This document shows positions 11,789 to 52,215 of a stretch of 64,000 nt of DNA, piece by piece. This DNA comes from Octopus sinensis. Its lineage: Eukaryota. The position numbers were made by a program, and so were the translations under genes. A model generated the notes under the pieces. That model searched no databases, was not told where the DNA came from, and saw only the letters and a program-made list of their open reading frames with translations. Each line of letters opens with the position of its first letter. Position 1 is the stretch's first letter. The stretch covers positions 72,912,001 through 72,976,000 of the forward strand of contig NC_043008.1 of NCBI RefSeq assembly GCF_006345805.1, read 5' to 3'.

Positions 11789-12703
11789 TTGGGTTATCCC
11801 ATAAATAATGCAATTCTTTTTATACTTCTTTTATTTTTCAAAATTAGGATAAACAAAGTTCTTTTTTAATCTAAAACATACTCTCCTTCATTTTCTACAA
11901 TGCTCTTCCATCTATTTGGTAGACTTGCAAGGCCCCACTTCCAAATTTCCCTTATCTGTGATGAAAAATACACCTCCAGTACTGTTCTGATCTTGTCAAA
12001 AGAATTCATATTTTTTCCGTCCAAATGATTTTGAAAACTGTGGAATAAACTATAATCAGATGGGGCAATGTCTGGGAAATATAGTGGGTGGGACATCATT
12101 TCTCTTTCAAACTGTTCCAGCCTTTGGAATGTCATCCTTGCTCCATGTGGCCAAGCAATATCCTGATGGAAGAACATCTTTGATCTTGAAACCAAAGATG
12201 GTCATTTTCTGATGGTATGCAAGCGTTGATGAATGGTTGAATGACCAAATCCAAGCTTCAATGCTATTTCCTCAACAGTTACAATGGGATTTAGGTCCAC
12301 CAGGGTTTGTAGGACATCCTCATCAAGTGCCACAGATCTTCCATGACGTGGCTTATCTTTTAAGCTGTAGTTTCTAGTATTGAATTTCTGGAACCACATT
12401 GGCTTACGCTTATTGTCCAATCCCATATACTGTATTAATATTCCTCACACTTTCTGTTGTGTGGTTGCCTTTATTGAACTCATAAGGCAAAATATGCCGA
12501 ATATGCTCCTTTGTCACTTTCATAATAACTTTGAAAATATAACAGTTGAACTGCACTCTTCAAAACTTGCACTAAGAATAAGGACAAGGTGAAATTACTA
12601 CCTGTTTCTATAGCAAATTGATGCACAATAGTTTATCCTGTCCCCTTCTGACTTTTAATTCATGCAATTGAAAAAAAAACACATTATTTATGGGATGACC
12701 CAA
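11789..12703 (-). mobile_element. Internally deleted mariner transposon (915 bp)
   Basis: TIRs TTGGGTTATCCCATAAATAATG / CATTATTTATGGGATGACCCAA; TA on the left and TG on the right. The transposase remnant starts at 12523 (MKVTKEHIRHILPYEFNKG), with HTH in 12202-12426 and the C-terminus in 11866-12195 (HPLYFPDIAPSDY...RWKSIVENEGEY). The first catalytic D region is deleted. Confidence 0.92.
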
Positions 12704-12787
12704 TGTAATATACAGCTATATAAATATACACAGACAAATATATGTATATATCATATGCATATATATATATATATATATATATCATAT

Positions 12788-15684
12788 ATCACAGGCAAGG
12801 AACACAGGTACAAGATTTTCTGGGCAGGGAACACTGACGGAGTCGGGGGCGTGGGTATACTTCTTGCGGAGAAATGGGTAGGTAAGGTAATCGAGGTAGT
12901 CAGAGTAAGTGACAGAGTAATTAAAATTAGATTAGTTCTTCACCATAGGACAGCTACCATCATCTCGGCATATGCCCCTCAACCAGGGCTACCGGAAGGA
13001 CAAAAAGACCAATTCTATGACACCCTATTGCGGACTACCTCATTGACAAATGACAGTGACCTTCTCTTCGTGGCAGGTGATTTCAATGGACATGTTGGAC
13101 GACATGTCGGGGGCTTCCATGGCGTCCATGGAGGCTACGGTTTTGGCTCTCGAAATGAGGAAGGAACCAGGCTGCTGGAGTTCTGCGATGCAAATGACCT
13201 TATGGTCTGCAATACCCACTTCAGGAAACCCACCTCTCACCTAGTCACCTACCGTTCTGGCAGACACACCAGCCAGATTGACTACATCCTTGCCAGAAAA
13301 AGGGAAAGAGGGCTGATTATAAATGCCAAAACCTTCCCAGGCGAAGAATGTACTCCCCAACATAGATTAGTAGTTAGCGACTTCAGGATCAGAGCTAAAT
13401 GGTTGCCCAGAAGAAGACCAGCTTGGAGGAGAAGGGTCTGGAAGCTTAAAGATCCTGCAAATGGACAGAGATTTAGAGACATACTACTCGAAGCCTCTGA
13501 CGAAATAGAAGGGGATATAGCTTCACTTAATGTGGAAGACAACTGGAGATTCCTACGGGACAATCTGCTGACAGCCACTGACCAGATCTGTGGATGGAGC
13601 AAAGTACCATCTCGACCCAGAGTAACATGGTGGTGGAACACTGTGGTTGACAGGGCTATTAGACAAAAGAGACAGGCTTGGAAGGACTGGAAGAACGGTG
13701 GTAGCAGGGAATTGTATCAGACAGCCAAAAGGGAAGCTAGGAGACAGGTTTATTTAGCCAGAGGGGAAGCGGATAAGAAAAAATTTGCCAATGTTCTGAG
13801 CCGTGAGGATGAAAGACTTGAGGTATTTCGTGTTGCAAGACAGTGTGTGAGAGAGAATCGTGATGTGGTAGGAGAGAAGTGTGTTCGCATGGATGATGGT
13901 TCACTTGCGCTAAATGAGGATGCAAAGAGAGAGGTTTGGAGATGCCACTATGAAAGGTTGCTGAATAAAGAAAATGAATGGGATAAAGAGAGTCTGCCGA
14001 ATGTTGACCCAACAGAGGGACCAGCTATCCGAGTTGATAGTTCCGTGGTAGCTAAGGCAATTAGAAGCATGAAGACAGGGAAAGCCCCAGGCCCATCAGG
14101 AATTACTGCAGAGATGCTCAAAATATCTGGCAGTGTCGGCTATAACCTAGTCACCCGTATAGTCAACCAGGTGATACACGAAGGAGTCATACCCAATGAC
14201 TGGTGTAGCAGCATACTAGTCAACTGCTACAAAGGTAAAGGTGATGCCCTGGATACAAATAATTACAGAGGTATCAAGCTGTTGGATCAGGTAATGAAGG
14301 TTACGGAGAGGGTCATAGCCCAACTAATTAGAGAGAGAGTTAGTTTATTGAGATGCAGTTTGGGTTTGTCCCAGGGAAAAGCACCACTGATGCTATATTC
14401 CTGGTAAGGCAGCTGCAGGAGAAATACCTAGCCAAAGATAAGCCCCTGTACCTGGCTTTCGTTGACATGGAGAAAGCCTTTGATAGGGTCCCCCGATCCC
14501 TCATCTGGTGGTCAATGAGGAAACTAGGGATAGATGAATGGCTGGTGAGGGCTGTGCAAGCCATGTACAGAGATGCCGTAAGTAAGGTTAGAGTTGGCAG
14601 CATGTACACAGAAGAATTCAAGGTAGAGGTTGGGGTCCACCAGGGTTCAGTACTCAGCCCCCTCCTATTTATCATAGTCCTCCAGGCAATTGTGGAGGAA
14701 TTCAAGACAGGTTGCCCCTGGGAGCTCCTCTATGCTGACGACCTCGCTCTAATCGCTGAGTCACTATCAGAACTGGAGGAGAAGTTCCAGGTGTGGAAGG
14801 AGGGTTTAGAATCGAGGGGCCTTAGAGTCAACCTAGCTAAAACCAAAGTACTAATAAGTAGAAAGTTAGAAAATCCACAAATATCCTCAGGAAGATGGCC
14901 CTGCTCGATCTGTAGAAAAGGTGTAGGTAGAAACTCTATAAGATGTACCCAGTGTAAGCTATGGACACATAAGAGGTGCAGCAATGTCAAAGGTAGGCTA
15001 ACTGGGAAGATAGTTTTTGTATGTGGCAGATGCTCTGGAGCATTGACCTCCGAAAATCTGCAGAAAACAACTTCCGTCACTTTCCGGGGGGAAAAACTAG
15101 AAGTAGTTGATAGCTTCCGCTATCTAGGTGACCAAGTCAGTAGTGGGGGCGGGTGCGCTGAAAGTGTAACTGCTAGAATAAGAATAGCCTGGGCAAAGTT
15201 TAGGGAGCTCTTACCTCTGCTGGTGACTAAAGGCCTCTCGCTCAGAGTAAAAGGCAGACTGTATGATGCATGTGTACGAACAGCTATGCTACATGGCAGT
15301 GAAACATGGGCCGTGACTGCTGAGGACATGCGTAAGCTTGTGAGGAACGAAGCCAGTATGCTCCGATGGATGTGTAATGTCAGTGTACTTACTCGACAGA
15401 GCGTTAGTACCTTGAGAGAAATGTTGTACCTAAGAAGCATCAGTTGTTGTGTGCAAGAGAGACGATTGCGCTGGTATGGTCATGTGGCGAGAATGGATGA
15501 AGATAGGTGTGTGAGAAAGTGCCAATCCCTAGCAGTTGAGGGAACCCGTGGAAGAGGTAGACCCAGGAAAACCTGGGACGAAGTGGTGAAGCACGACCTT
15601 CGGACGTTAGGTCTCACCATGGAAATGACTAGAGACCGAGACCTATGGAAGTATGCTGTGCGTGAGAAGACCCGGCAAGACTAG
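12788..15684 (+). pseudogene. RTE ORF2 (APE endonuclease + reverse transcriptase + PHD finger); 5'-truncated with one frameshift near 14345
   Basis: ORFs 12662..14407 and 14353..15684 join into a continuous RTE polyprotein (...IRERVSL/EMQFGFVPGKSTTDAIF...). No internal stops appear in either segment. Confidence 0.93.
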
Positions 15685-16306
15685 TGAAGCCATAATCCGT
15701 GGCCCCTACCTGGGACGTAGTCAGTCCACCTGTGCATACCTTCCTTCTTGTGACACTTGTGAAGACCTGTTGAGGCAAGTGAGAATCGAATCGAATCAAA
15801 TCAAATCAAATCGAACCAAATCAAAATAGATGAACATCAATGGAATTGTATCCTTGTGGTACCAGTGCCGGTGGCACATAAGAAAACCATCCGAACGTGA
15901 TCCTAGCCAGTACCGCAACGACTGGCCTCCGTGCTGAGGGCACATAACAAACACCATCCGAGCGTGGCCGTCCGCCAGCCCCGTCTGGCACCTGTGTCGG
16001 TGACACATAAGAAAACACCATCCGAGCGTGGCCGTCAGCCAGCCTCGTCTGGCACCTGTGTCGGTGGCACATAAAAAACACCATCCGAGCATGGCCGTCT
16101 GCCAACCTCGTCTGGCACCTGTGTCGGTGGCACATAAAATCACCCACTACACTCTCGGAGTGGTTGGCGTTAGGAAGGGCATCCAGCTGTAGAAACACTG
16201 CCAGATCTGACTGGCCTGGTGCAGCCTTCGGGCTTGCCAGACCCCAGTTGAATCGTCCAACCCATGCTAGCATGGAAAGCGGACGTTAAACGATGATGAT
16301 GATGAT
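12789..16306 (+). mobile_element. RTE-clade LINE, 5'-truncated, young copy
   Basis: APE domain motifs (GDFNGHVG, IDYIL, HRLVV), RT with YADD at 14731, a 620-bp 3' UTR and a (GAT)5 tail. A 14-bp TSD ATATATATCATATA flanks it at 12775-12788 and 16307-16320. Confidence 0.96.
15865..16150 (+). repeat. Five 63-66 bp tandem units in the RTE 3' UTR
   Basis: The core GTG(C/T)CGGTG(G/A)CACATAA..AACACC recurs at ~15865, 15931, 15994, 16058 and 16121. Confidence 0.9.
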
Positions 16307-16326
16307 ATATATATCATATACATATA

Positions 16327-17623
16327 CGAGGGGCGTTCAATAAGTAATGCCCCTGACCCACTTCCTATAGCAGTAGAGCAACGAAACTTGGCACAGTTAT
16401 TAGTCTTTTTCTACATAGGAACCACCCAGAGTTACGCATTTCTCCCATCGTTTGATGCAGCTCTGGAGACCGTTTTTGTAGAAGACCCCAGCTTGGTCCT
16501 CCAGCCACGACGGGACTTCAGAAATCAAGGCTGCATCATCTGGGAAATGCTTTCCTTTCAAAAACAACTTCATGGCTAGGAAGAGGTGAAAATCAGAGGT
16601 TGCAAGGTCAGGAGAGTAGGGGGGATGGGGGAGGAGTTCATAGCCGCATGCCTGTGCTTCTGATCTGGCGATACGCGAGTTGTGGACCAGAGTGTTGTCC
16701 TGCAGGAGGGGGATGCCTTTGCTGATCTTGCCCCGCCTCTTGATTTTGATAGCTCCTCTTAATTTCCTCAAAAGTGAAGCATAATAGGCTCCTGTAATTG
16801 CGGTACCCTTTGCCAGGAAATCTGTCATCACTACTCCGTCCTGGTCCCAGAAGACTGTGAGCATGACCTTGCCAGCGGAGGGCTGCACCCTTGCCTTCTT
16901 TGGAGGAGGGGAGTCGCAGTGCTTCCACTACATTGACTGGGCTTTGGTCTCTGGATCATAGTGATGGACCCAGGTTTCATCCTGTGTAATCAGTCTTTTG
17001 AAAAATTTTGACTCATCTTCTTGGCACATCTCCAAATTCATACTTGAACACTCGACGCATTCTTGCTTCTGGAAAGGTGTGAGCAACCTGGGAATCCATC
17101 TGGCAGACACCTTTTGCATATGCAAATGGTCATGAATGATAGTTTCCACAGACCCAGTACTAATCTTGACCTCATGGGCTATTTGATGAATAGTTATGCA
17201 TCGATCTTCCAAAATGGCAGCCTCAACTTGATGGACAGATACCTCATCAATGGCAGAAGGGGGGGGGGCGACCAGATCTGGGAGCTGTTTCCACAGAGTT
17301 CCGACCATGTTTGAATTCACGATGCCAGCGTTTTACAAGGTCATATGATGGGGCATCATCACCATAAGTTACTTTCATTTCATCAAAAGTCTCCCGTGGT
17401 GTGCGTCCTTTCAAATACAAAAACCAGATCACTGCTCGACACTCAACAGGCTCCATTTCACACTTGACTCAGTTCAAACACATGTAAATCAGAAACCACA
17501 ATTAGTTCAGAGCTGTAATTTGCCACTTAATCTATAGAGCTAAAAATAGTTGCACATGCAAAATTTCAACTAGATCAAACAACTGCAAGTGGGTCAGGGG
17601 CATTACTTATTGAACGTCCCTCG
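16327..17623 (-). mobile_element. Full-length mariner (DD34D) transposon, 1297 bp
   Basis: 37-bp TIRs with one mismatch (CGAGGGGCGTTCAATAAGTAATGCCCCTGACCCACTT) and TA TSDs at 16325-26 and 17624-25. Confidence 0.97.
16400..17456 (-). pseudogene. Mariner transposase with one frameshift (G/C run ~17260) and one premature stop (16928-30)
   Basis: MEPVECRAVIWFL...WIPRLL...ITQDETW...LQDN...HPPYSPDLATSDF; 34 residues separate the second and third catalytic D. Confidence 0.95.
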
Positions 17624-30608: not shown

Positions 30609-33600
30609 GAGTAATAGATATGAAGAAAATGAAAATGGCACAACAGTTCAATTTCATTGGTATGGTGCTAGCAAGTTTAAAATGATGGGAAACTTCTGAC
30701 AAATAGACTCTTTCCCACCACTGAATTACTGGATATGGATTAGGAAGAGCAGAAAAATTTCGAAATACAGTAAGTAAAAGGATTTTGAAGTGAAGGGGAC
30801 TTATACAGTCAATTAGATGGGAAAAATTTGATAAGTGAATTTCAGAAATAAAATTATTTAAACTAGTAAGATGGTTTTTGGGTTTGTTAATTTGGTTCTT
30901 TATAACAATGCTGCAAGCTAAAGTTGAGAGTAGGTTGTCTGCCTAATTGTCAGAATTTCGCTTCAGAAGAATTGTTGGGATTTTGACAATTATAAAACAT
31001 GAACTTAAAACTTCCAACACATGCCAATTCCCAATTGGAAGTCGACCAAAGTAGGAAATGTATTGAGTGAATTATAAATTTTGACAATAGTGAAAACTTG
31101 TTTGCTAACATAGTGAGAGAAGGAAAAAGGGTTGAAGTTGTTGTTGTTCAGTCTTGGAGAAGGAAAGCAATCGATGTGGAACAAAGCTAGATCAAGAACT
31201 TATCAAGTGGAAACCAGTTAATGAAGCAGTTTGTCATTAAAAGCAAAGGAAAGTTGATCTGAATGTTTTCCTGTAACATAGGTAACTAGAGCTTAGGTAG
31301 TTAGAGATGTTGCAACTCAATATAACTACTTCCTACATTTGTATTTAATACATTAATGCAACAATACATATATACATACATACAAATAATTGCAAATAGA
31401 AATGAGCATACATACATGTGCAATTATAGGTTTGTGGTTAAGAACTCTTCCCAACAACATGGCTTAAGGTTCAAGCTCAATGCACAGCACCTTGTGCAAA
31501 TGTTTTTTTTATAGCCCTGGGTAGATTTGTTTGAGAGAAACTAAAAGTATATCATACATAGGTACATATATATGCATTTGTGTATTTGTTTATATTAGTG
31601 CTTCTCTAAAATTTGCTTTTCTACAAGTGATGATATTACTGTCATTTCCTATGTCAACATATCCTCTGCTTTAGAATATGTGTTGAATAAGATATTCTTC
31701 ACATAAAAAAGAAATAAATGTTTATGATAGAAAGGATGTCTGCTTTAAAATTAAATCTCAATAATATAGGTCTAACCTTTTCTAGCATGGAAAAGCTGAT
31801 TTTATTACTGATGATTGAAGATGGAGAAAGAGACAGAAATATTTAGGAGTTTTTTTTTAGTAAGTTGATAAAATGCAAGAAATCTGGTCAAAAAAGTTGA
31901 TGGTTCACATCACATCCACACTATAATATTGTTTCCATAGCTATCCAATATTTTTTAGAACACTATCAATGATTACAGCTAATTGCTATGGCGTACTCTA
32001 TAATTAACAGTTAATTAACTGAGGTTAAGACCCTTGACACAGATATATTTCAGCCTACAGCAATACCACATTATCATTCACCCTCTGCCAACTACTAGCC
32101 TATTACTTTCACTTCCAGCATCTCATTACTGATGGAGATGGTTGTAAGCTGTTCCTAGGATCTTTCTCCATCTTCCTCCTTCTGTTGATATTCCATAGAG
32201 CCTGATTAAATGAACATTTGCTCTCCTACATTACACATTAAAAGTCTTTCAATCTTGAGATTTTCAGCAAACACAAGTTAGTTATCTTGAGTTTTACTGA
32301 ACATTGGCAAAGCCATCAACTCTGTCTAGTATGTGAAACTCATTGCCAAATTTCTCACCTATGTTTTAAGCCATACTTCCATTTCTTGTATAAAAATTTT
32401 CCATTTGGAATATTCTGTCACTATCTATTCTGACAGTGACAGAATTTTTCAACAGAGAACTTTCAATACAAGAAATCGAAGTAGGATTTCTCCTTGACCC
32501 ACATTTTATTAATTCTTGTATACTACAGGAAAATGATTCTTGTTTTTGTCTATTAATAATGTGCTTGCTGTTAGCTTTTACAAAATTCACTCCTGTGCAT
32601 GGTACCACCTTTCCCTCCTCAATCTGCTGCTCACAAGTATAATTTACCTTTAGCTTAAACATTTTACTTCCATGAAAAGGGAGCTGCCAGAAAATATTAT
32701 TTTAGTGTGTATCACCAAGCTGCCTTCATTACAGATAACAAGAATTCAGTCTCCTTAAACATTTCTAAAACCTTTAAAGCATCCATATGGAACCCCCCCC
32801 CCCCCCGAACAGATTTCACCTTGACTGTTACTGACCATAAAGTCCTTGTTTGCTGTAATTTATGCTTTCATCACCGCCCCGCCCCCCCCCCCACACACAC
32901 ACACTTCCTCTAACCCACCTCCTCTACTCCTCATCTGTTGCTTCAAATACCAAGTCTTATAATCCCACATCCTTCTACACACATCACAAACCCTGTGCTT
33001 CATGTTCTTCTTCAGGCAACAAAAGTGTTTCATCTGCCTTAGTGATTGACCCTCCACAAATCTTAACATCTACATATATATCTGTACCAATCTGTCTCTT
33101 TTAGAGAACTCTTGGCACTAGCACCTATCCTTGGAAAATATACACTGTAGGAGAGAAGCAAAAAGAATTTGTGGTATCAATGCTTTATTCAAGAGTATTA
33201 ATATATGGCTAATACTGACTTGTTTCAGGAATATAAAAAAACTTGTTTAAATATAGTGAAACTGTGTGTGGGTGGGGTACGTGTGTGTGCATGTATATGT
33301 GTGTACATAAAACCATGTCTTAATGGTCACACACATGAGTTGATAATGAGGTGGCCTGTAACCATCTGTAGGAGGAAAGTAATAAATATGTTTTATTTAA
33401 AATTTTCCAGTCATGTACTTTAACACTAAGCATTTTAACATTGTAACTGAAGTTAATAACATTGGCATATATAGTTATTTCCATTATTTGTTAATAAGCA
33501 TGTTGTGTATATCTTTACCTCTGTCTGTCCCTTTTATTTTATTCTGATATTCAGGTGTTAATATATTTCCAAGTTTAATGCACTATAGTCTAAATAGCTG

Positions 33601-44659: not shown

Positions 44660-45790
44660 GTATAGCTTTCATGTGCAGCAGATGCACAGGGGCAATAGAC
44701 ACCATTGATACTCAGAAAACAGATTCCATTACACTCCTTGGGGAGAAACTAGAAGTAGTTGATAGTTTCTGCTACCTAGGTGACCAAGTTAGTAGCAAGG
44801 ATGGATGCTCAGAGAGCGTTACCAATAGAATAAGAATAGCCTGGGCAAAGTTTAGAAAGCTTCTCCCCCTACTGGCGACAAAGGGTCTCTCGCTCAGAGT
44901 GAAAGGTAGATTGTATGATGCATGTGTGCGAACTGCCATGCTTCATGGCAGTGAAACATGGGCTGTGACTGCGGAGGACATGTGTAGGCTTGAAAGAAAT
45001 GAAGCTAGCATGATCCGCTGGATGTGTAATGTCAGTCTCCATGCATAACAGAGTGTAAGTGCCCTGAGAGAAATCTTGGACATAAGAAGCATCAAATGTG
45101 GTGTGCAAGAGAGACAACTGCTCTTGTATGGTCATGTACTATGAATGGATGAGGAGAGATGTGTGAAGAGGTGCCACTCCCAAACTGTTGAAGGAATCCG
45201 GGGTAGAGATAGACCCAGGAAGACATGGGACGAGGTGGTCAAGCATGACCTTCGTACTTTGAGCCTCACAGAGGCTATGACAAAAGACTGAGACCTCTGG
45301 AGATATGCTGTGACTTCAAAGACCCGACAAATGAAGTGAGTTCATGGCTCGTAGGATGGCTTGCTATGCTAACCTTGGATCGTAGAGTGACCCACTGTTC
45401 TTGAGGAGACTTGTTGAGTCAAGTATGTCAACATCAAAATAAAAATTCAAATGGAAATTGCAGTTGAGACGCCCATACCAGTGACACGTAAAAAGCACCA
45501 TCCAAACATAGCAGATACTAGTGCTGCCTGACTGGCATCCATGTCGGTGACATGTAAAAGCACCAACCGATCATGGCCGTTTACCATCCTCCTCTGGACC
45601 CTGTGCCAGCGGCACGTAAAAAACACCCACTACACTCACGGATTGGTTGGCATTAGGAAGGGCATCCAGCAGTAGAAACACTGCCAAATCAGACTAGAGC
45701 CTGGTGCAGCCTCAATGGCTTGCCAGACCCCGGTCGAACCGTCCAACCCATGCTAGCATGGAAAACGGACGTTAAATGATGATGATGATG

Positions 45791-45791
<1 letters not shown>
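44660..45791 (+). mobile_element. RTE 3' fragment (end of PHD to tail), older copy with stops
   Basis: FMCSRC...LGEKLEVVDSFCYLGDQV...LRVKGRLYDACVRTAMLHGSETW, followed by the 3' UTR repeats and (GAT)n. Confidence 0.92.
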
Positions 45792-45840
<49 letters not shown>

Positions 45841-48162: not shown

Positions 48163-48879
48163 TCTAGATGTTATCAACAATTTCAACAAGAAAAAGAGAA
48201 AGATTGAATTAACATTTAAATAAAATAGGGATTTATCTAGCAGTCTCAAACAGCGTTATTTATTACAATTAATGACACCGGATATTACTACCAGGTATAA
48301 CCCCTTTCTACTAGCAATGCCAGTCAACTAGTGATTTTTCCCACTTATTGTTCCATTCATCTAATTGAAGAAATGTACACACACGTGGAATCTTAAAGGA
48401 CACAAAAATGTAAGCCCTAAAGACTTTTTTTTTTTTTTCTAGTTTCAGCTCAGAACTGCGGCCATGCTGAAGCACTGCCGTTTAAACATTTTACATTTTT
48501 TCCTTTTTCCTTACCTTTTCCTTTTTCTCCTCTCTATATTCCTCCAATAAACTTTAAATTATTCTAACAATGTTTGTTAAATGGAACGAGATAAATGCAA
48601 ATTTACTTAAAAAATAACAAACTGAAACAACTGTAAATGTTTTTCAACTACAATTAAACTATGACATTTTAATACCAATGATCAACTTCTAGCTGTTCAT
48701 TGTTGCACCATTTCTTTTCTTATCTGAATATATTAAACCATGGTTTGCCATTTAAATTACCAACTACTGTTAACCTTATAGCAAAGACTATACATAGTGA
48801 GGTGATACACCAGTAGTGCCTACAGATACATTTATCCTTAGACGGCAGCATAACCTGTAGCTCATAATTTATATATATG

Positions 48880-48910
<31 letters not shown>

Positions 48911-48913
48911 GTA

Positions 48914-48970
<57 letters not shown>

Positions 48971-50006
48971 GTTGGACAAAATAATGGAAACACCTAGCAT
49001 CATAGCATCATAATTTGAAAATATCTATAAAACCGTCAAAAGCTTATTTATTTTTATGTTGATTTTTGATATATCATTAGTATTGGTTAATATGTTTTGC
49101 TAAAATTGCTGTTTCTTTTCAGATATCATCAGAAAAAGGTAATTAAAATTCATTAAAATGACAGATGTATCAGACTTTCAAAGAGATCAAATTGCTGGTG
49201 CTTGTATAGCAGGTGCTAGCATAACGAAAACAACTGAAACATTTGATGCATCAAGAACTACCATCTTGAAAGTAATGACAGCCTTTGAGAAAAAGGGAAA
49301 AACCTCCTCATCAAAACAAAACTATAGAAGAAAACCAAAACTTTCAGACAGGGACCATCAGACTCTTATGCGAATTGTTAGAAAGGATCACAAAAGTACA
49401 GGTCCCAAAATTCCTGCAGAGCTTAATGACCACCTCGAGAACCCAGTTTCCACAAAAACTTCACCAGGAGCTGCACAAAGCCAGATTTCACAGGAGGACT
49501 GCAATCAGAAAACCACTCTTTCAAAAACAAACGTTGCAAAGCATTTAGAGTTGAGTAAAAACCTACAGAATTGGTCCCTAGATCAGTGGAAGAATGTTAT
49601 TTTCTCAGACAAGTCATCTTATACCTTATTTCTGACCACTGGCTGAGTACATGTGTGGAGACAACTAAAAGAAGCATTTGACCCAGACTGCATTCTTCCA
49701 ACTGTTAAACATGGAGGAGGATCTGTGATGATCTGATGGGGCTACATCTCGGAAATCCACCGGCCCAATGGTTTCCCTTCATGGCAGAATTAATAGTCAA
49801 TACTATTTGAGCATTTTATCTGATCAAATTCATCCTATGGTTACGAAACTGTTTGCAGAGGGAAACAATTATTTAGGATGATAATGCACCAATTCACACT
49901 GCTAAAGTTGTTAATAAATGGCAGGAAGAACATTCTAGTGAAGTTGAACATCTTCTCTGGCCCCAACAGTCCCCAGATCTCAATATTATCGAACATTTAT
50001 GGTGCA

Positions 50007-50186
50007 TACAGTTAAGAGATGAAGAATTATGTACATTATTTACATTATTTACGTTTGATGGATATCTGTCCTCATCTTATTTGTTGTTAACACAATGTTT
50101 CAGCTAATATACCCTCCAGCCTTCATCAGGTGTCTTGGGGAAATTTCGAACCTGGATTCTCATTCCTAAGGTATTTTTCGATGTTG

Positions 50187-50230
<44 letters not shown>

Positions 50231-50401
50231 TGGGTCACTGCCTGGAATCGAACTTCGATATATCAGTGCTAAAATTCACTCCGTAATTGCCCATGGGCAT
50301 ATGGCTTAGTGATTAAGAGCCTGGGCTACTGACCCCAAGATTATAATAATAATAACGAAAAATACATTAGAAATGAGAAGCCAGGTTCAAATGAATAATG
50401 T
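50007..50401. mobile_element. Foldback insertion: tRNA-like head, (TAA)n and a Penelope-type hammerhead-bearing tail
   Basis: Flanked by the 12-bp direct repeat ATTTATGGTGCA (49995-50006, 50402-50413). Inverted arms lie at ~50145-50185 and ~50353-50390. A-box-like TGGCTTAGTG on + (~50298) and B-box GTTCGATTCC on - (~50243-50252). Confidence 0.75.
50089..50134 (-). ncRNA. Minimal (stem III-less) type I hammerhead ribozyme motif, decayed
   Basis: The minus strand reads GACAC-CTGATGA-AGGCTGGAGGGTATATTAGCT-GAAA-CATT-GTGTT. Stem I is GACAC/GTGTT; stem II is weakened by substitutions. Confidence 0.7.
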
Positions 50402-50590
50402 ATTTATGGTGCAATATCCTCCAACATCAACACTTCAAGAGACTGTTTTAGCTGAAGAATGGACAAAAATTCCTTTGGAAACAATTCAAACTATGCACCA
50501 GTCCATACCTCATAGAAATCAAGCTGTAATTACTGCTAAAGGTGATCGTACCCCATATTAAAAGATGTTTCCATTATTTTGTCCAGCCCT

Positions 50591-50630
<40 letters not shown>

Positions 50631-50999
50631 TTTTAATTTTCTCCTGGTTTACGGAATTGATGTTATTTTGCGGTTAAAGCTTTTGGCTGTTATTTCTAGT
50701 GGGTGAATGGCCTATTATGGCCGTTCCTTGATTGTGATGTTGAACTTAAAAATGGTCTATGACTATTTAATTTTTTCCCACTAGGCCGCTGGTGGCAAAA
50801 AAAATTCTACAAAATTTTTTTGCCACCCTATATTGATTAATTATGAATTTTCTGGTTAATTCCGTAATGGAATCGGCGGCTTATATTTATTTGCTGCCGA
50901 TAAATTTGGCGCGAGTGCGATGATTTGAAAATTTTAGGTCAGATATTGCCGAGGCAGGGACGGGAATGCCTCGTGAAAAATATCTGTTCCGACTTGGCT

Positions 51000-51106
51000 A
51001 TTTCTTACTGATGAATCTAAGGGCCTATGGTAGATTGGCTTGATTTAATTTAATCAGGTTAGTTTACCATTAAACAGTAGACGAAACGGTGCATCGTATA
51101 AGAAAT
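51000..51106 (+). ncRNA. Type I hammerhead ribozyme motif, copy 1 (predicted cleavage after 51098, GUA)
   Basis: Stem I ATTTCTTA (51000-07) / TAAGAAAT (51099-106) is a perfect 8 bp. CTGATGA lies at 51008-14, the extended stem II at 51015-82 and GAAA at 51083-86. Stem III is A-C-G-G/T-C-G-T with a TGCA loop. Confidence 0.88.
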
Positions 51107-51490
51107 TACAGGGTAAATGTTTTTTAATTTTCTCCTGGTTTACGGAATTGATGTTATTTTGCGGTTAAAGCTTTTGGCTGTTATTTCTAGTGGGTGAATA
51201 GCCTATTATGGCCGTTCCTTGATTGTGATGTTGAACTTAAAAATGGTCTATGACTATTTAATTTTTTCCCACTAGGCCGCTGGTGGCAAAAAAAATTCTA
51301 CAAAATTTTTTTGCCACCCTATATTGATTAATTATGAATTTTCTGGTTAATTCCGTAATGGAATCGGCGGCTTATATTTATTTGCTGCCGATAAATTTGG
51401 CGCGAGTGCGATGATTTGAAAATTTTAGGTCAGATATTGCCGAGGCAGGGACGGGAATGCCTCGTGAAAAATATCTGTTCCGACTTGGCT

Positions 51491-51597
51491 ATTTCTTACT
51501 GATGAATCTAAGGGCCTATGGTAGATTGGCTTGATTTAATTTAATCAGGTTAGTTTACCATTAAACAGTAGACGAAACGGTGCATCGTATAAGAAAT
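51491..51597 (+). ncRNA. Type I hammerhead ribozyme motif, copy 2 (predicted cleavage after 51589)
   Basis: Identical to copy 1 and offset by 491 bp: CTGATGA 51499-505, GAAA 51574-77. Confidence 0.88.
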
Positions 51598-51719
51598 TAC
51601 AGGGTAAATGTTTTTTAATTTTCTCCTGGTTTACGGAATTGATGTTATTTTGCGGTTAAAGCTTTTGGCTGTTATTTCTAGTGGGTGAATGGCCTATTAT
51701 GGCCGTTCCTTGATTGTGA

Positions 51720-51752
<33 letters not shown>

Positions 51753-51756
<4 letters not shown>

Positions 51757-52215
51757 GGGGTACCCAAAAGAAGCCAGAATTTTGCAATATCATTTTATTG
51801 ACTTAGTTTTACATTTTTACACTTTTATATCACCTTCAAAGTATTCTCCATTTGAAGCAATGCATCAACCCAGATACATTTTCTACTGTTCAAAGCACTC
51901 CTGGAACTCCTGTGAAGTGATGACTTTTAATGCCTCCATCGTTTTTGTCTTCACCTCTTCTGTCTGCAAAATGTTTTTCTTTAAGGGCTTTTTCATCTAA
52001 GGGAAACAAAAAAGTCCGGGTCAATTTCCAACACATTTTTCAGTTCACGATATGCATTCAGTCATGATTGCCTTTGATCTTCTGTAAGCAAGCGAGGCAC
52101 TAATTTAGCTACAACTCTTTTCATTTGCAAATCCTCACTCAAAATTCATTGGCAGGAAATTGAGGACCTAGCAGTCACATCAACCAGTTCGTCAGTTGTT
52201 CAGTGATGGTTCTCC
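51753..52215 (-). mobile_element. Deleted mariner fragment with one TIR
   Basis: TA|TGAGGGGGTACCCAAAAG terminus; the minus strand encodes a mariner-like C-terminus ending EYFEGDI. No second TIR was seen. Confidence 0.65.

What the first reader, a model, noticed from the sequence alone, without database searches (positions are those of the whole stretch)
50626..51721. Tandem 491-bp array with one type I hammerhead ribozyme per unit: a retrozyme-like, circRNA-producing element in a probable cephalopod genome
Seen in sequence: 2.23 nearly identical non-coding units. Each complete unit has stem I (ATTTCTTA/TAAGAAAT, perfect 8 bp), the CTGATGA core, stem II, GAAA, a short stem III closed by a palindromic TGCA loop, and a GUA cleavage triplet (sites after 51098 and 51589). 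Established: tandem repeats carrying type I hammerheads with short, palindrome-capped stem III define non-LTR retrozymes in metazoans (e.g. newt satellite 2, schistosome Sm-alpha, corals, mussels) and Penelope-like element pseudo-LTRs. Their transcripts self-cleave to monomers that can circularise. Inference: transcription of this locus would release a 491-nt monomer (51099-51589), which is longer than the few-hundred-nt monomers I recall for animal retrozymes. I do not know of a described cephalopod family with this architecture, but I could not search for one.
Basis: partly seen in the sequence, partly recalled or inferred. Interest (0 to 1): 0.93.

Follow-up and report, generated by a model that had tools for sequence, protein, structure and literature searches.

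The report
Hammerhead-ribozyme tandem retroelement in octopus DNA
A 1.1-kb, non-coding, 2.2-copy tandem repeat sits in a TA microsatellite of an octopus-like genome and carries one hammerhead self-cleaving ribozyme motif per 491-bp unit; it looks like an ordinary member of the known animal "retrozyme"/Penelope-associated repeats, and its ribozyme activity remains untested.

Summary
Window 50626-51721 is a 491-bp tandem repeat of 2.2 copies with a single mismatch. It is non-coding and 36.5% GC. Each full unit carries a complete type I hammerhead: an 8-bp helix I, CUGAUGA, helix II, GAAA, a weak quasi-palindromic helix III, and a GUA cut site after 51098 and 51589. A descriptor scan found only these two motifs in the window and none as good in 400 random sequences. 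The unconstrained fold of the two-copy transcript is a textbook double hammerhead.

Helix II opens with an A10.1·C11.1 mismatch in place of the conserved G-C pair. Helix II is a 68-nt G·U-rich hairpin. No Rfam hammerhead model matches, even at E≤10.

The array splits a perfect (TA)n tract, which is the preferred target of several Penelope-like element clades. Its 3' junction lies 132 nt past the cut site and has no homology to the target, as in Penelope-type internal initiation.

My best reading is a young non-LTR retrozyme or Penelope-derived non-autonomous insertion in an Octopus-like genome. That makes it a new member of a known kind. The 491-nt unit length is not unusual. Self-cleavage, circular RNA, copy number and the autonomous partner could not be tested.

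The parts
50626..51721 (+). Tandem array of 2.23 units of 491 bp. In cleavage-site coordinates it spans monomer positions ~20-491, 1-491 and 1-132. It is non-coding and 36.5% GC.
   Evidence: TRF. Alignment with one mismatch. Blastn finds no other copy in the window and the longest open frame is 39 aa. GC content.
51000..51106 (+). Hammerhead copy 1 (type I). Helix I 51000-51007 pairs with 51099-51106. CUGAUGA is at 51008-51014. Helix II is 51015-51082, made of A10.1·C11.1, then UCUA/UAGA, an internal loop, and a 19-bp helix 51027-51045/51052-51070. GAAA is at 51083-51086. Helix III is 51086-51097. A17 is at 51098, with the cut after 51098.
   Evidence: Sequence read. Descriptor hit. Fold (z = -4.8). 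Chance test.
51491..51597 (+). Hammerhead copy 2, identical to copy 1. The cut is after 51589.
51099..51589 (+). Predicted 491-nt monomer released if both hammerheads cleave. It is a candidate linear or circular RNA.
   Evidence: Inference from the two cut sites. Linear MFE is -148 kcal/mol with z = -5.2. Circular MFE is -144 kcal/mol with 60% of bases paired, and helices I and II are retained in the global fold.
51086..51097 (+). Quasi-palindromic helix III segment ACGGUGCAUCGU, repeated at 51577-51588. As a hairpin it is weak (-1.2 kcal/mol). As a copy-to-copy duplex it forms 12 bp (-17.5 kcal/mol).
   Evidence: In the unconstrained MFE of 50980-51625 the two segments pair with each other and the helices I form in trans.
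50593..50627 (.). Left half of the split (TA)n target microsatellite, (TA)17.5.
   Evidence: TRF. Sequence.
51722..51753 (.). Right half of the split (TA)n target microsatellite, (AT)16. Removing the array rejoins the halves into one in-phase (TA)~33 tract, so no target-site duplication can be discerned.
   Evidence: TRF. Sequence.

Best explanation
This is a young insertion of a non-autonomous, hammerhead-bearing tandem retroelement. It is either a metazoan non-LTR retrozyme or, equivalently, a non-coding derivative of a Penelope-like element (PLE). The host genome is octopus-like.

Shown directly:
- A 2.23-unit, 491-bp, non-coding, AT-rich direct repeat splits a perfect (TA)n tract.
- Each unit carries every invariant hammerhead core nucleotide in type I order.
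- Helix III is too weak as a hairpin, but the two copies pair through it, and the minimum-energy fold of the two-copy transcript is a double hammerhead.

Inferred mechanism:
1. The locus, or a longer donor array elsewhere, is transcribed as an oligomer.
2. Adjacent hammerheads act as a dimer and cut after the GUA triplets, releasing a 491-nt monomer with 5'-OH and 2',3'-cyclic phosphate ends.
3. A host tRNA-type ligase can close this monomer into a highly base-paired circular RNA.
4. A PLE reverse transcriptase/GIY-YIG endonuclease supplied in trans nicks AT-rich or (TA)n DNA.
5. It starts reverse transcription at an internal RNA site about 130 nt downstream of the cut site, without homology to the target.
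6. It copies more than one unit length, from a partly processed oligomer or a circle, which gives the partial tandem seen here.

The A10.1·C11.1 mismatch probably makes cleavage slow or factor-dependent, as reported for PLE hammerheads.
For: Array and hammerhead:
- The array and the near-identity of its units are shown. It is non-coding.
- The complete core and three helices occur once per unit. They are the only such motifs in the window, and none of 400 random sequences gave one as good.
- The helix III hairpin is -1.2 kcal/mol against -17.5 kcal/mol for the 12-bp inter-copy duplex.
- A double hammerhead is the unconstrained MFE of 50980-51625.
- The monomer is strongly structured (z = -5.2; 60% paired as a circle).
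- The 19-bp helix II extension holds 5 G·U pairs, so it forms only on the hammerhead strand.
- GC content is 36.5%.

Insertion site:
- The array lies between (TA)17 and (AT)16.
- (TA)n is the preferred target of Neptune, Naiad and Hydra PLEs (PMC8557442).
- The 3' junction is 132 nt downstream of the cut site and has no homology to the target. In the Anolis PLE, reverse transcription starts 85-92 nt downstream of the hammerhead cut at a site not homologous to AT-rich cleaved DNA (PMC11167929).

Literature context:
- Retrozymes co-occur with PLEs and are related to PLE pseudo-LTRs (2026 preprint).
- O. vulgaris carries 31 PLE families (PMC13282606).
Against: - No Rfam hammerhead model matches, even at E≤10 on the 126-nt motif.
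- The most conserved helix pair, G10.1-C11.1, is replaced by an A·C mismatch. Natural active examples with a mismatch are U·U, said to be the best-tolerated mispair (PMC3088659).
- Helix I is an uninterrupted 8 bp with no evident loop 1. Helix II is a 68-nt hairpin. The usual loop 1/loop 2 tertiary contact is therefore not recognisable.
- Only one locus is available. I found no second copy in the window, in the protein-based look-ups, or in three DNA collections. Family membership, mobility and covariation are therefore untested.
- No PLE coding remnant is near the array. A crude GIY-YIG regex over six frames was negative.
- There are no expression data.
Confidence: 0.62

Rival explanations
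1. It has the same evolutionary origin, but it is not an independent retrozyme family. It is a tandem of pseudo-LTR sequence left by an autonomous, already catalogued octopus Penelope-like element. It could be a partial-tandem insertion severely 5'-truncated before the ORF, or the result of an ORF deletion.
For: - PLE insertions are typically partial tandems with a hammerhead in the pseudo-LTR (PMC8557442; PMC4209133).
- Retrozyme consensuses in Xenopus are sister to PLE pseudo-LTRs.
- O. vulgaris has 31 PLE families.
- The (TA)n target and the non-homologous internal 3' junction are PLE signatures.
Against: - Two full units follow each other with no ORF between them, and no RT or GIY-YIG remnant is in or beside the array.
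- PLE min-hammerheads usually lack helix III and keep G10.1-C11.1 with an extra nucleotide after A9. This motif has a 4-bp helix III with a loop and an A·C mismatch.
- The unit could not be compared with any PLE library.
Confidence: 0.2
2. It is a hammerhead-derived repeat that is now catalytically dead. The G10.1-to-A change, a single transition from the classical CUGAUGAGUC...GACGAAAC arrangement, inactivates cleavage. On this reading the locus is a fossil that produces no monomer or circular RNA.
For: - The A·C mismatch sits at the most conserved helix pair. The literature states that mispairs other than U·U are less active.
- No tertiary loop-loop motif is recognisable.
- Rfam models fail.
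- PLE-type hammerheads show low or protein-dependent activity even when canonical.
Against: - All other invariant positions are intact in both copies.
- The units differ at 1 of about 600 compared positions, so there has been little time for decay.
- Hammerheads with reduced or even absent helix II keep some activity (minizymes, PMC544870).
- Both copies carry A10.1. It was therefore already in the template that transposed, unless the second copy arose by later local duplication.
Confidence: 0.3
3. It is an ordinary local tandem duplication or minisatellite that carries a hammerhead-like motif by chance. It would have no ribozyme ancestry and no retrotransposition.
For: - Only one locus has been seen.
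- Rfam models do not match.
- Relaxed descriptors do give chance hits: 7 loose hits in 400 random windows, and two weak relaxed hits elsewhere in the window at 30983(+) and 50129(-).
Against: - No random sequence reached the observed helix lengths. My rough extrapolation is about 1e-4 per 63-kb window before requiring a tandem repeat or the palindromic loop.
- The 12-nt quasi-palindrome lies exactly between GAAA and the cut site and yields a double hammerhead as the MFE.
- The 19-bp helix is strand-specific and G·U-rich.
- The array splits a (TA)n tract precisely.
Confidence: 0.07
4. It is a fragment of hammerhead satellite DNA, like newt satellite 2 or cricket pDo500, that grew or shrank by unequal crossing-over. 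On this reading it is not a retrotransposed insertion.
For: - Satellites of about 500 bp with hammerheads exist (PMC2837043).
- Tandem organisation and near-identical units are also what unequal exchange or gene conversion gives.
Against: - Only 2.23 units are present, embedded in a transposon-rich euchromatic-looking region.
- The ends are clean and non-unit-phased, and they abut the two halves of one microsatellite. This is the footprint of an insertion.
Confidence: 0.08

Closest known systems
Metazoan non-LTR retrozymes (Cervera & de la Peña 2020, PMC7229834; corals, mussels, axolotl; Li, Clavereau & Pollet 2026 preprint)
   Same: Short non-coding tandem repeat. One type I hammerhead per unit. 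GC below 50%. No LTR, primer-binding site or polypurine tract. Highly self-paired monomer. Weak palindromic helix III implying dimer action, as in amphibian retrozymes. The host genome also carries PLEs.
   Different: Helix II is a 68-nt hairpin with a 19-bp G·U-rich helix instead of about 4 bp plus a loop. The 10.1/11.1 position is an A·C mismatch. No loop 1/loop 2 contact is recognisable. Rfam does not detect it. Expression, circularity and copy number are unknown. No cephalopod family is described in the papers I could search.
Hammerheads in pseudo-LTRs of Penelope-like elements (Cervera & de la Peña 2014, PMC4209133; Craig et al. 2021, PMC8557442; Frangieh et al. 2024, PMC11167929)
   Same: Type I hammerhead acting as a dimer. 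Helix II longer than usual. Partial-tandem insertion. AT-rich or (TA)n target. The 3' junction is internal to the RNA and not homologous to the target, roughly 100 nt downstream of the cut site.
   Different: There is no RT/GIY-YIG ORF between the repeats. PLE min-hammerheads usually lack helix III, have a short helix I (4-5 bp), keep G10.1-C11.1 and have one extra nucleotide after A9. Here helix I is 8 bp, helix III is 4 bp with a UGCA loop, and 10.1/11.1 is A·C.
pDo500 satellite of Dolichopoda cave crickets (PMC2837043), and newt satellite 2 / Schistosoma Sm-alpha (the last two from general knowledge)
   Same: Tandem units of a few hundred to about 500 bp, each with one type I hammerhead. 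Double-hammerhead (dimer) folding.
   Different: Those are high-copy satellites or SINE-like families with shown in vitro cleavage. This is a single 2.2-unit array of unknown family size and untested activity.
Plant LTR retrozymes (PMC4918200)
   Same: Non-autonomous retroelement whose transcript is cut by hammerheads into a monomer that circularises.
   Different: Plant elements have type III hammerheads inside about 350-bp LTRs, a primer-binding site, a polypurine tract, 4-bp target duplications and Ty3-type mobilisation. None of these is present here.

Membership tests
Hammerhead ribozyme, type I | Invariant core: C3 U4 G5 A6 N7 G8 A9, G12 A13 A14, the A15.1-U16.1 pair, and H17 (not G) at the cut site | tested here: met
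   CUGAUGA is at 51008-51014, GAAA at 51083-51086, U16.1 at 51097 and A17 at 51098. Copy 2 is identical at +491.
Hammerhead ribozyme, type I | Three helices around the core, with helix I open (type I order) | tested here: met
   Helix I is 8 bp, helix II is 4 bp plus a 19-bp extension, and helix III is 4 bp including one G·U. The order is I-5', core, II, GAAA, III, cut site, I-3'.
Hammerhead ribozyme, type I | Conserved G10.1-C11.1 pair closing helix II | tested here: not met
   A10.1 (51015) faces C11.1 (51082). Natural active exceptions are known for U·U only (PMC3088659).
Hammerhead ribozyme, type I | Match to the curated covariance models (Rfam Hammerhead_1 and related families) | tested here: not met
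   No hammerhead hit at the gathering threshold, at E≤10 on 1.2 kb, or at E≤10 on the 126-nt motif. The 68-nt helix II is the likely reason, but I could not test that.
Hammerhead ribozyme, type I | Loop 1/loop 2 tertiary contact that gives fast cleavage at physiological Mg2+ | tested here: inconclusive
   Helix I has no internal loop within its 8 bp. An internal loop in helix II (AGGGCCU/UAAACAG) sits where loop 2 would be. No contact can be asserted from one sequence.
Hammerhead ribozyme, type I | Site-specific Mg2+-dependent self-cleavage | not testable with these tools
   This needs in vitro transcription of 50980-51625.
Metazoan non-LTR retrozyme | Head-to-tail tandem repeat of roughly 150-450 bp (up to 972 bp reported) with one type I hammerhead per unit | tested here: met
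   Period 491, 2.2 copies, with one motif per full unit.
Metazoan non-LTR retrozyme | Non-coding, GC below 50%, no LTR, primer-binding site or polypurine tract | tested here: met
   Longest open frame is 39 aa. GC is 36.5%. The array is a plain direct repeat with no terminal repeat structure. No tRNA-like sequence is in the window.
Metazoan non-LTR retrozyme | Monomer RNA predicted to be highly self-paired | tested here: met
   Linear z = -5.2. The circular fold has 60% of bases paired. Caveat: the minus strand has the same z-score, so the excess over shuffles is not strand-specific. Only the G·U-rich helix II is.
Metazoan non-LTR retrozyme | Multi-copy dispersed family in the genome (mobility) | not testable with these tools
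   No eukaryotic genome collection was available. There is no second copy in the window, and all indirect searches were negative.
Metazoan non-LTR retrozyme | [quoted passage not shown] | not testable with these tools
   No transcriptome access.
Penelope-like element (autonomous) | ORF with telomerase-like RT and GIY-YIG endonuclease between pseudo-LTRs | tested here: not met
   There is no ORF longer than 39 aa in the array. No GIY-YIG-like motif appears in six frames of the window (a crude regex). The flanks are a Tc1-like element (DDE_3) and a mariner-like remnant.
Penelope-like element (insertion signature) | Partial tandem, AT-rich or (TA)n target, 3' junction internal to the RNA and not homologous to the target | tested here: met
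   The array has 2.23 units. It is flanked by (TA)17 and (AT)16. The junction reads GTGATG|ATAT where the unit reads GTGATG|TTGA.

The most novel reading that the evidence does not exclude
The hammerhead may be gated by A-to-I RNA editing. A10.1 sits opposite C11.1 at the foot of a helix II with about 23 bp in all, 5 of them G·U pairs. An adenosine opposite cytidine in double-stranded RNA is the classic preferred ADAR substrate. Inosine at 10.1 would restore the conserved pair as I-C. Self-cleavage and circular RNA release would then be switched on only in tissues with high ADAR activity, which octopus nervous tissue is known for. The G·U-rich helix could itself be a fossil of earlier A-to-I editing fixed by reverse transcription. 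Nothing here tests this idea. It rests on the mismatch, the long strand-specific helix and general knowledge of ADAR and of hepatitis delta amber/W editing.
Probability: 0.04. Interest if true: 0.85.

Novelty: new member of a known kind. Interest (0 to 1): 0.35.

Why it matters
If confirmed, this would add octopods to the animals known to carry hammerhead retrozymes. It would also give a clean single-insertion example that links retrozyme arrays to Penelope-type integration: a split (TA)n target and a non-homologous internal 3' junction about 130 nt past the cut site. It also shows that covariance-model annotation with Rfam misses hammerheads carrying large helix II insertions, so cephalopod counts such as the 235 loci in giant squid are likely underestimates. 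The unusual A·C position and the long double-stranded helix II make it a convenient natural test of how much the 10.1/11.1 pair matters in a dimeric hammerhead. None of this changes the current picture of retrozymes.

Tried and rejected
1. Rfam cmscan was run at gathering threshold on the whole window, at E≤10 on 50560-51800 and at E≤10 on 50990-51115. It found no hammerhead or other ribozyme family on either strand. The only hits were weak microsatellite and hairpin look-alikes (mir-297, rliF and similar), which I dismissed.

2. I looked for other copies of the unit:
- Blastn with word size 7 against the window found none.
- A composite query of all sixteen open six-frame peptides of at least 24 aa from the unit, searched against 5.8 billion proteins, gave no hit at E≤0.01.
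- Exact look-up of the junction ORF 51689-51997 was not on record.
- Pattern scans of metagenome, viral and prokaryote-genome collections gave four AT-rich contigs, L001-L004 (L001 and L003 have the same length and match coordinates). They meet the pattern but have no helix I, so they are not hammerheads and are unrelated. Two further scans were empty.

3. I tried to find the source genome or an orthologous empty site. Exact look-ups of two window LINE ORFs were not on record. An O. vulgaris locus, L005, fetched through a homologous RT, shares only transposon copies at 78-93% nucleotide identity (86-90% for the LINE copy), is not orthologous, and has no unit copy.

4. I looked for a PLE partner in the window. 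A GIY-YIG regex over six frames was negative. Supplementary files of PMC8557442 are not held, so no octopus PLE consensus could be obtained.

5. A relaxed min-hammerhead scan allowing the U3-A8 variant and no helix III gave two weak hits, at 30983(+) and 50129(-, inside the Tc1-like element). They have a non-canonical core or a non-palindromic 15.2/16.2 and I judged them chance.

6. I considered strand asymmetry of folding energy (-144 against -107 kcal/mol) as evidence for a functional strand. I rejected it as a general argument because both strands have the same z-score against their own shuffles. Only the G·U-dependent helix II is truly strand-specific.

7. I checked for a tRNA or SINE origin. 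ARAGORN found no tRNA-like sequence in the window.
Full report
**1. The observation**

Tandem Repeats Finder reports one array at 50626-51721 with period 491, 2.2 copies, 99% matches and no indels. Aligning the two full units and the 114-bp third unit shows a single difference, G/A at 51200. Blastn of the unit against the window finds no further copy. The longest open frame in six frames of the circularised unit is 39 aa. The unit is 36.5% GC and T- and G-rich on the plus strand.

**2. The hammerhead**

Reading the sequence and scanning with my own descriptor gives the following for copy 1:
- Helix I: AUUUCUUA 51000-51007 pairs with UAAGAAAU 51099-51106, a perfect 8 bp.
- Core: C3-A9, CUGAUGA, at 51008-51014.
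- Helix II: 51015-51082.
- G12 A13 A14 A15.1: GAAA at 51083-51086.
- Helix III: ACGG-UGCA-UCGU at 51086-51097, 4 bp including one G·U, with a palindromic loop.
- A17 at 51098, with the cut after it.

Copy 2 is identical, shifted by 491, with the cut after 51589. The strand order is type I.

The descriptor finds only these two sites on either strand of the 64-kb window. In 400 first-order Markov sequences of 63 kb, scanned on both strands, it gave 7 loose hits and none with helices as long as those observed. A rough extrapolation takes six extra base pairs at about 0.4 each. This puts a chance motif of this quality near 1e-4 per window, before asking that it sit once per unit of a tandem repeat and carry a palindromic loop. 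I therefore do not regard the motif as chance.

**3.

- Helix II does not begin with the conserved G10.1-C11.1 pair. A10.1 (51015) faces C11.1 (51082). Next come UCUA/UAGA, an internal loop, and a 19-bp helix (51027-51045 with 51052-51070) containing 5 G·U pairs. Helix II is 68 nt in all.
- A single G-to-A transition separates this from the classical CUGAUGAGUC...GACGAAAC arrangement.
- Perreault et al..1-11.1 the most conserved pair after 15.1-16.1. They describe natural active ribozymes with a U·U mismatch there, noted as the best tolerated of all mispairs (PMC3088659). An A·C mismatch is therefore likely to cost activity, though hammerheads with reduced or absent helix II still cleave (PMC544870).
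- No Rfam hammerhead model matches. This held at gathering threshold, at E≤10 on 1.2 kb and at E≤10 on the 126-nt motif alone. The long helix II insertion is the likely cause, but I could not test that because the tools do not accept an edited sequence.
- Helix I has no internal loop, so the usual loop 1/loop 2 contact is not recognisable.

**4. Dimer action**

Helix III as a hairpin is worth only -1.2 kcal/mol. The 12-nt segment ACGGUGCAUCGU is quasi-palindromic, and two copies form a 12-bp duplex of -17.5 kcal/mol.

I folded the natural two-copy transcript 50980-51625 without constraints. It gives exactly the double hammerhead: 51086-51097 pairs with 51577-51588, and each helix I forms between the 5' strand of one copy and the 3' strand of the other.

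This is the arrangement described for newt, avocado sunblotch viroid, cricket and PLE hammerheads (PMC4209133; PMC3088659; PMC2837043). With two motifs, the locus could release exactly one 491-nt monomer, 51099-51589.

That monomer is strongly structured. Its linear z-score is -5.2, and the circular fold has 60% of bases paired with helices I and II kept in the global fold. The minus strand has the same z-score, so overall structure is not strand-specific. The G·U-rich helix II is strand-specific, because it collapses on the minus strand.

**5. Surroundings and insertion footprint**

The array lies between (TA)17.5 at 50593-50627 and (AT)16 at 51722-51753. Removing it rejoins an in-phase (TA)~33 tract, so no target duplication can be read.

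The same ancestral microsatellite was hit by other elements:
- A Tc1-like element spans 48964-50594. Its inverted terminal repeats were found and a DDE_3 domain. It lies between (TA)49 and the left (TA)17.
- An internally deleted mariner-like remnant starts at 51754.

(TA)n is the preferred target of Neptune, Naiad and Hydra PLEs (PMC8557442).

In cleavage-site coordinates the insert is monomer positions ~20-491, 1-491 and 1-132.
- The 3' junction (GTGATG|ATAT, where the unit continues TTGA) is 132 nt downstream of the cut site and shares nothing with the target. In the only PLE studied in vitro, reverse transcription starts 85-92 nt downstream of the hammerhead cut. That start site is internal to the RNA and not homologous to the AT-rich cleaved DNA, and sequences further 3' are needed for binding (PMC11167929).
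- Here a perfect 13-bp hairpin (monomer positions 184-220) lies 52-88 nt 3' of the junction. This parallel is an inference only.
- The 5' end lies only about 19 nt from a cut site, which has a chance of about 4-8%. This suggests the template may have been an oligomer already cleaved at its 5' end. That too is inference.
- The one mismatch among about 600 comparable positions indicates a recent event or ongoing homogenisation.

**6. Host**

The window is a transposon-rich animal sequence. It contains a LINE with Exo_endo_phos_2, RVT_1 and PHD domains and a mariner Transposase_1. The LINE reverse transcriptase has as best named relatives Octopus bimaculoides (85% identity) and O. vulgaris (82%). 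An O. vulgaris chromosome segment carries copies of the same LINE family at 86-90% nucleotide identity. "Cephalopod" is therefore supported, and specifically an Octopus-like octopod. The species is not identified.

**7. Comparison with what is known**

[quoted passage not shown] They also match the view that these are non-autonomous derivatives of PLE pseudo-LTRs (2026 preprint).

Unit length is not exceptional. pDo500 is about 500 bp and retrozyme consensuses range from 51 to 972 bp.

Cephalopod hammerheads are already annotated, with 235 Hammerhead_1 loci in the giant squid. O. vulgaris has 31 PLE families. In the searchable library I found no description of an octopus or cephalopod retrozyme family.

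Differences from typical members are the 68-nt helix II, the A·C pair and invisibility to Rfam.

**8. Verdict**

My best explanation is a young PLE-mobilised hammerhead retrozyme insertion in a (TA)n tract, with confidence 0.62.

The main rivals are:
- a pseudo-LTR remnant of a catalogued PLE (0.2);
- the same origin but catalytically dead because of A10.1 (0.3, which overlaps with the main reading);
- satellite dynamics (0.08);
- a chance motif (0.07).

Novelty: a new member of a known kind. Interest: 0.35.

The most novel reading not excluded is an ADAR-gated hammerhead, in which A10.1 opposite C is edited to inosine. I give it a probability of about 0.04.

Noticed in passing
window 48870-51753: One ancestral (TA)n microsatellite appears to have been hit at least three times by TA-targeting mobile elements. 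These are a Tc1-like element at 48964-50594 (24-nt terminal inverted repeats with 3 mismatches, a DDE_3 domain and a broken ORF), the hammerhead array, and a mariner-like remnant starting at 51754. Remnants of the tract survive as (TA)49, (TA)17 and (AT)16.
   Followed up: partly
window 51754-52200 (minus strand): A mariner-like element with an internal deletion. N-terminal helix-turn-helix-like residues are joined directly to the C-terminal end of the transposase, and its terminus GAGGGGGTACCCAAAAGAAGCC abuts the (AT)16. Pfam did not recognise the short pieces.
   Followed up: partly
window 12662-16310: A LINE with Exo_endo_phos_2, RVT_1 and PHD-finger domains in two overlapping frames. It is followed by a 63-bp x 3.2 tandem repeat at 15939-16139. 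Related tail copies are seen around 45527-45794 and in the O. vulgaris locus L005. Best named protein relatives are from Octopus bimaculoides and O. vulgaris.
   Followed up: partly
window 16400-17320 (minus strand): Two adjacent ORFs of a mariner-type transposase (Pfam Transposase_1), inserted right after the LINE tail.
   Followed up: partly
window 50791-50827 and 51282-51318: Each unit holds a near-perfect hairpin, GGUGGCAAAAAAAAUUCUACAAAAUUUUUUUGCCACC, with a 13-bp stem. It weakly resembles a miRNA precursor model (mir-5728, E = 0.72, far below threshold). It lies 52-88 nt downstream of the array's 3' end point in unit coordinates and could be a protein-binding element for the mobilising reverse transcriptase.
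   Followed up: no
window 51200: The only difference between units (G in units 1 and 3, A in unit 2) breaks a small GGCC/GGCC hairpin and is not compensated.
   Followed up: no
L001 5718-5808(-), L002 1443-1533(-), L004 1603-1693(-); L003 has the same length and match coordinates as L001: AT-rich viral or metagenome contigs contain CUGAUGA-AUCUA...UAGA-CGAAAC followed at once by a 7-bp hairpin ending in U-A. They have no helix I. This is probably a coincidence forced by the search pattern, and I did not examine it further.
   Followed up: partly
window 30983-31090 (+) and 50090-50135 (-): Two weak matches to a relaxed minimal-hammerhead descriptor. One has a UUGACAA variant core. The other lies inside the Tc1-like element with a non-palindromic 15.2/16.2. 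I judged both to be chance.
   Followed up: partly
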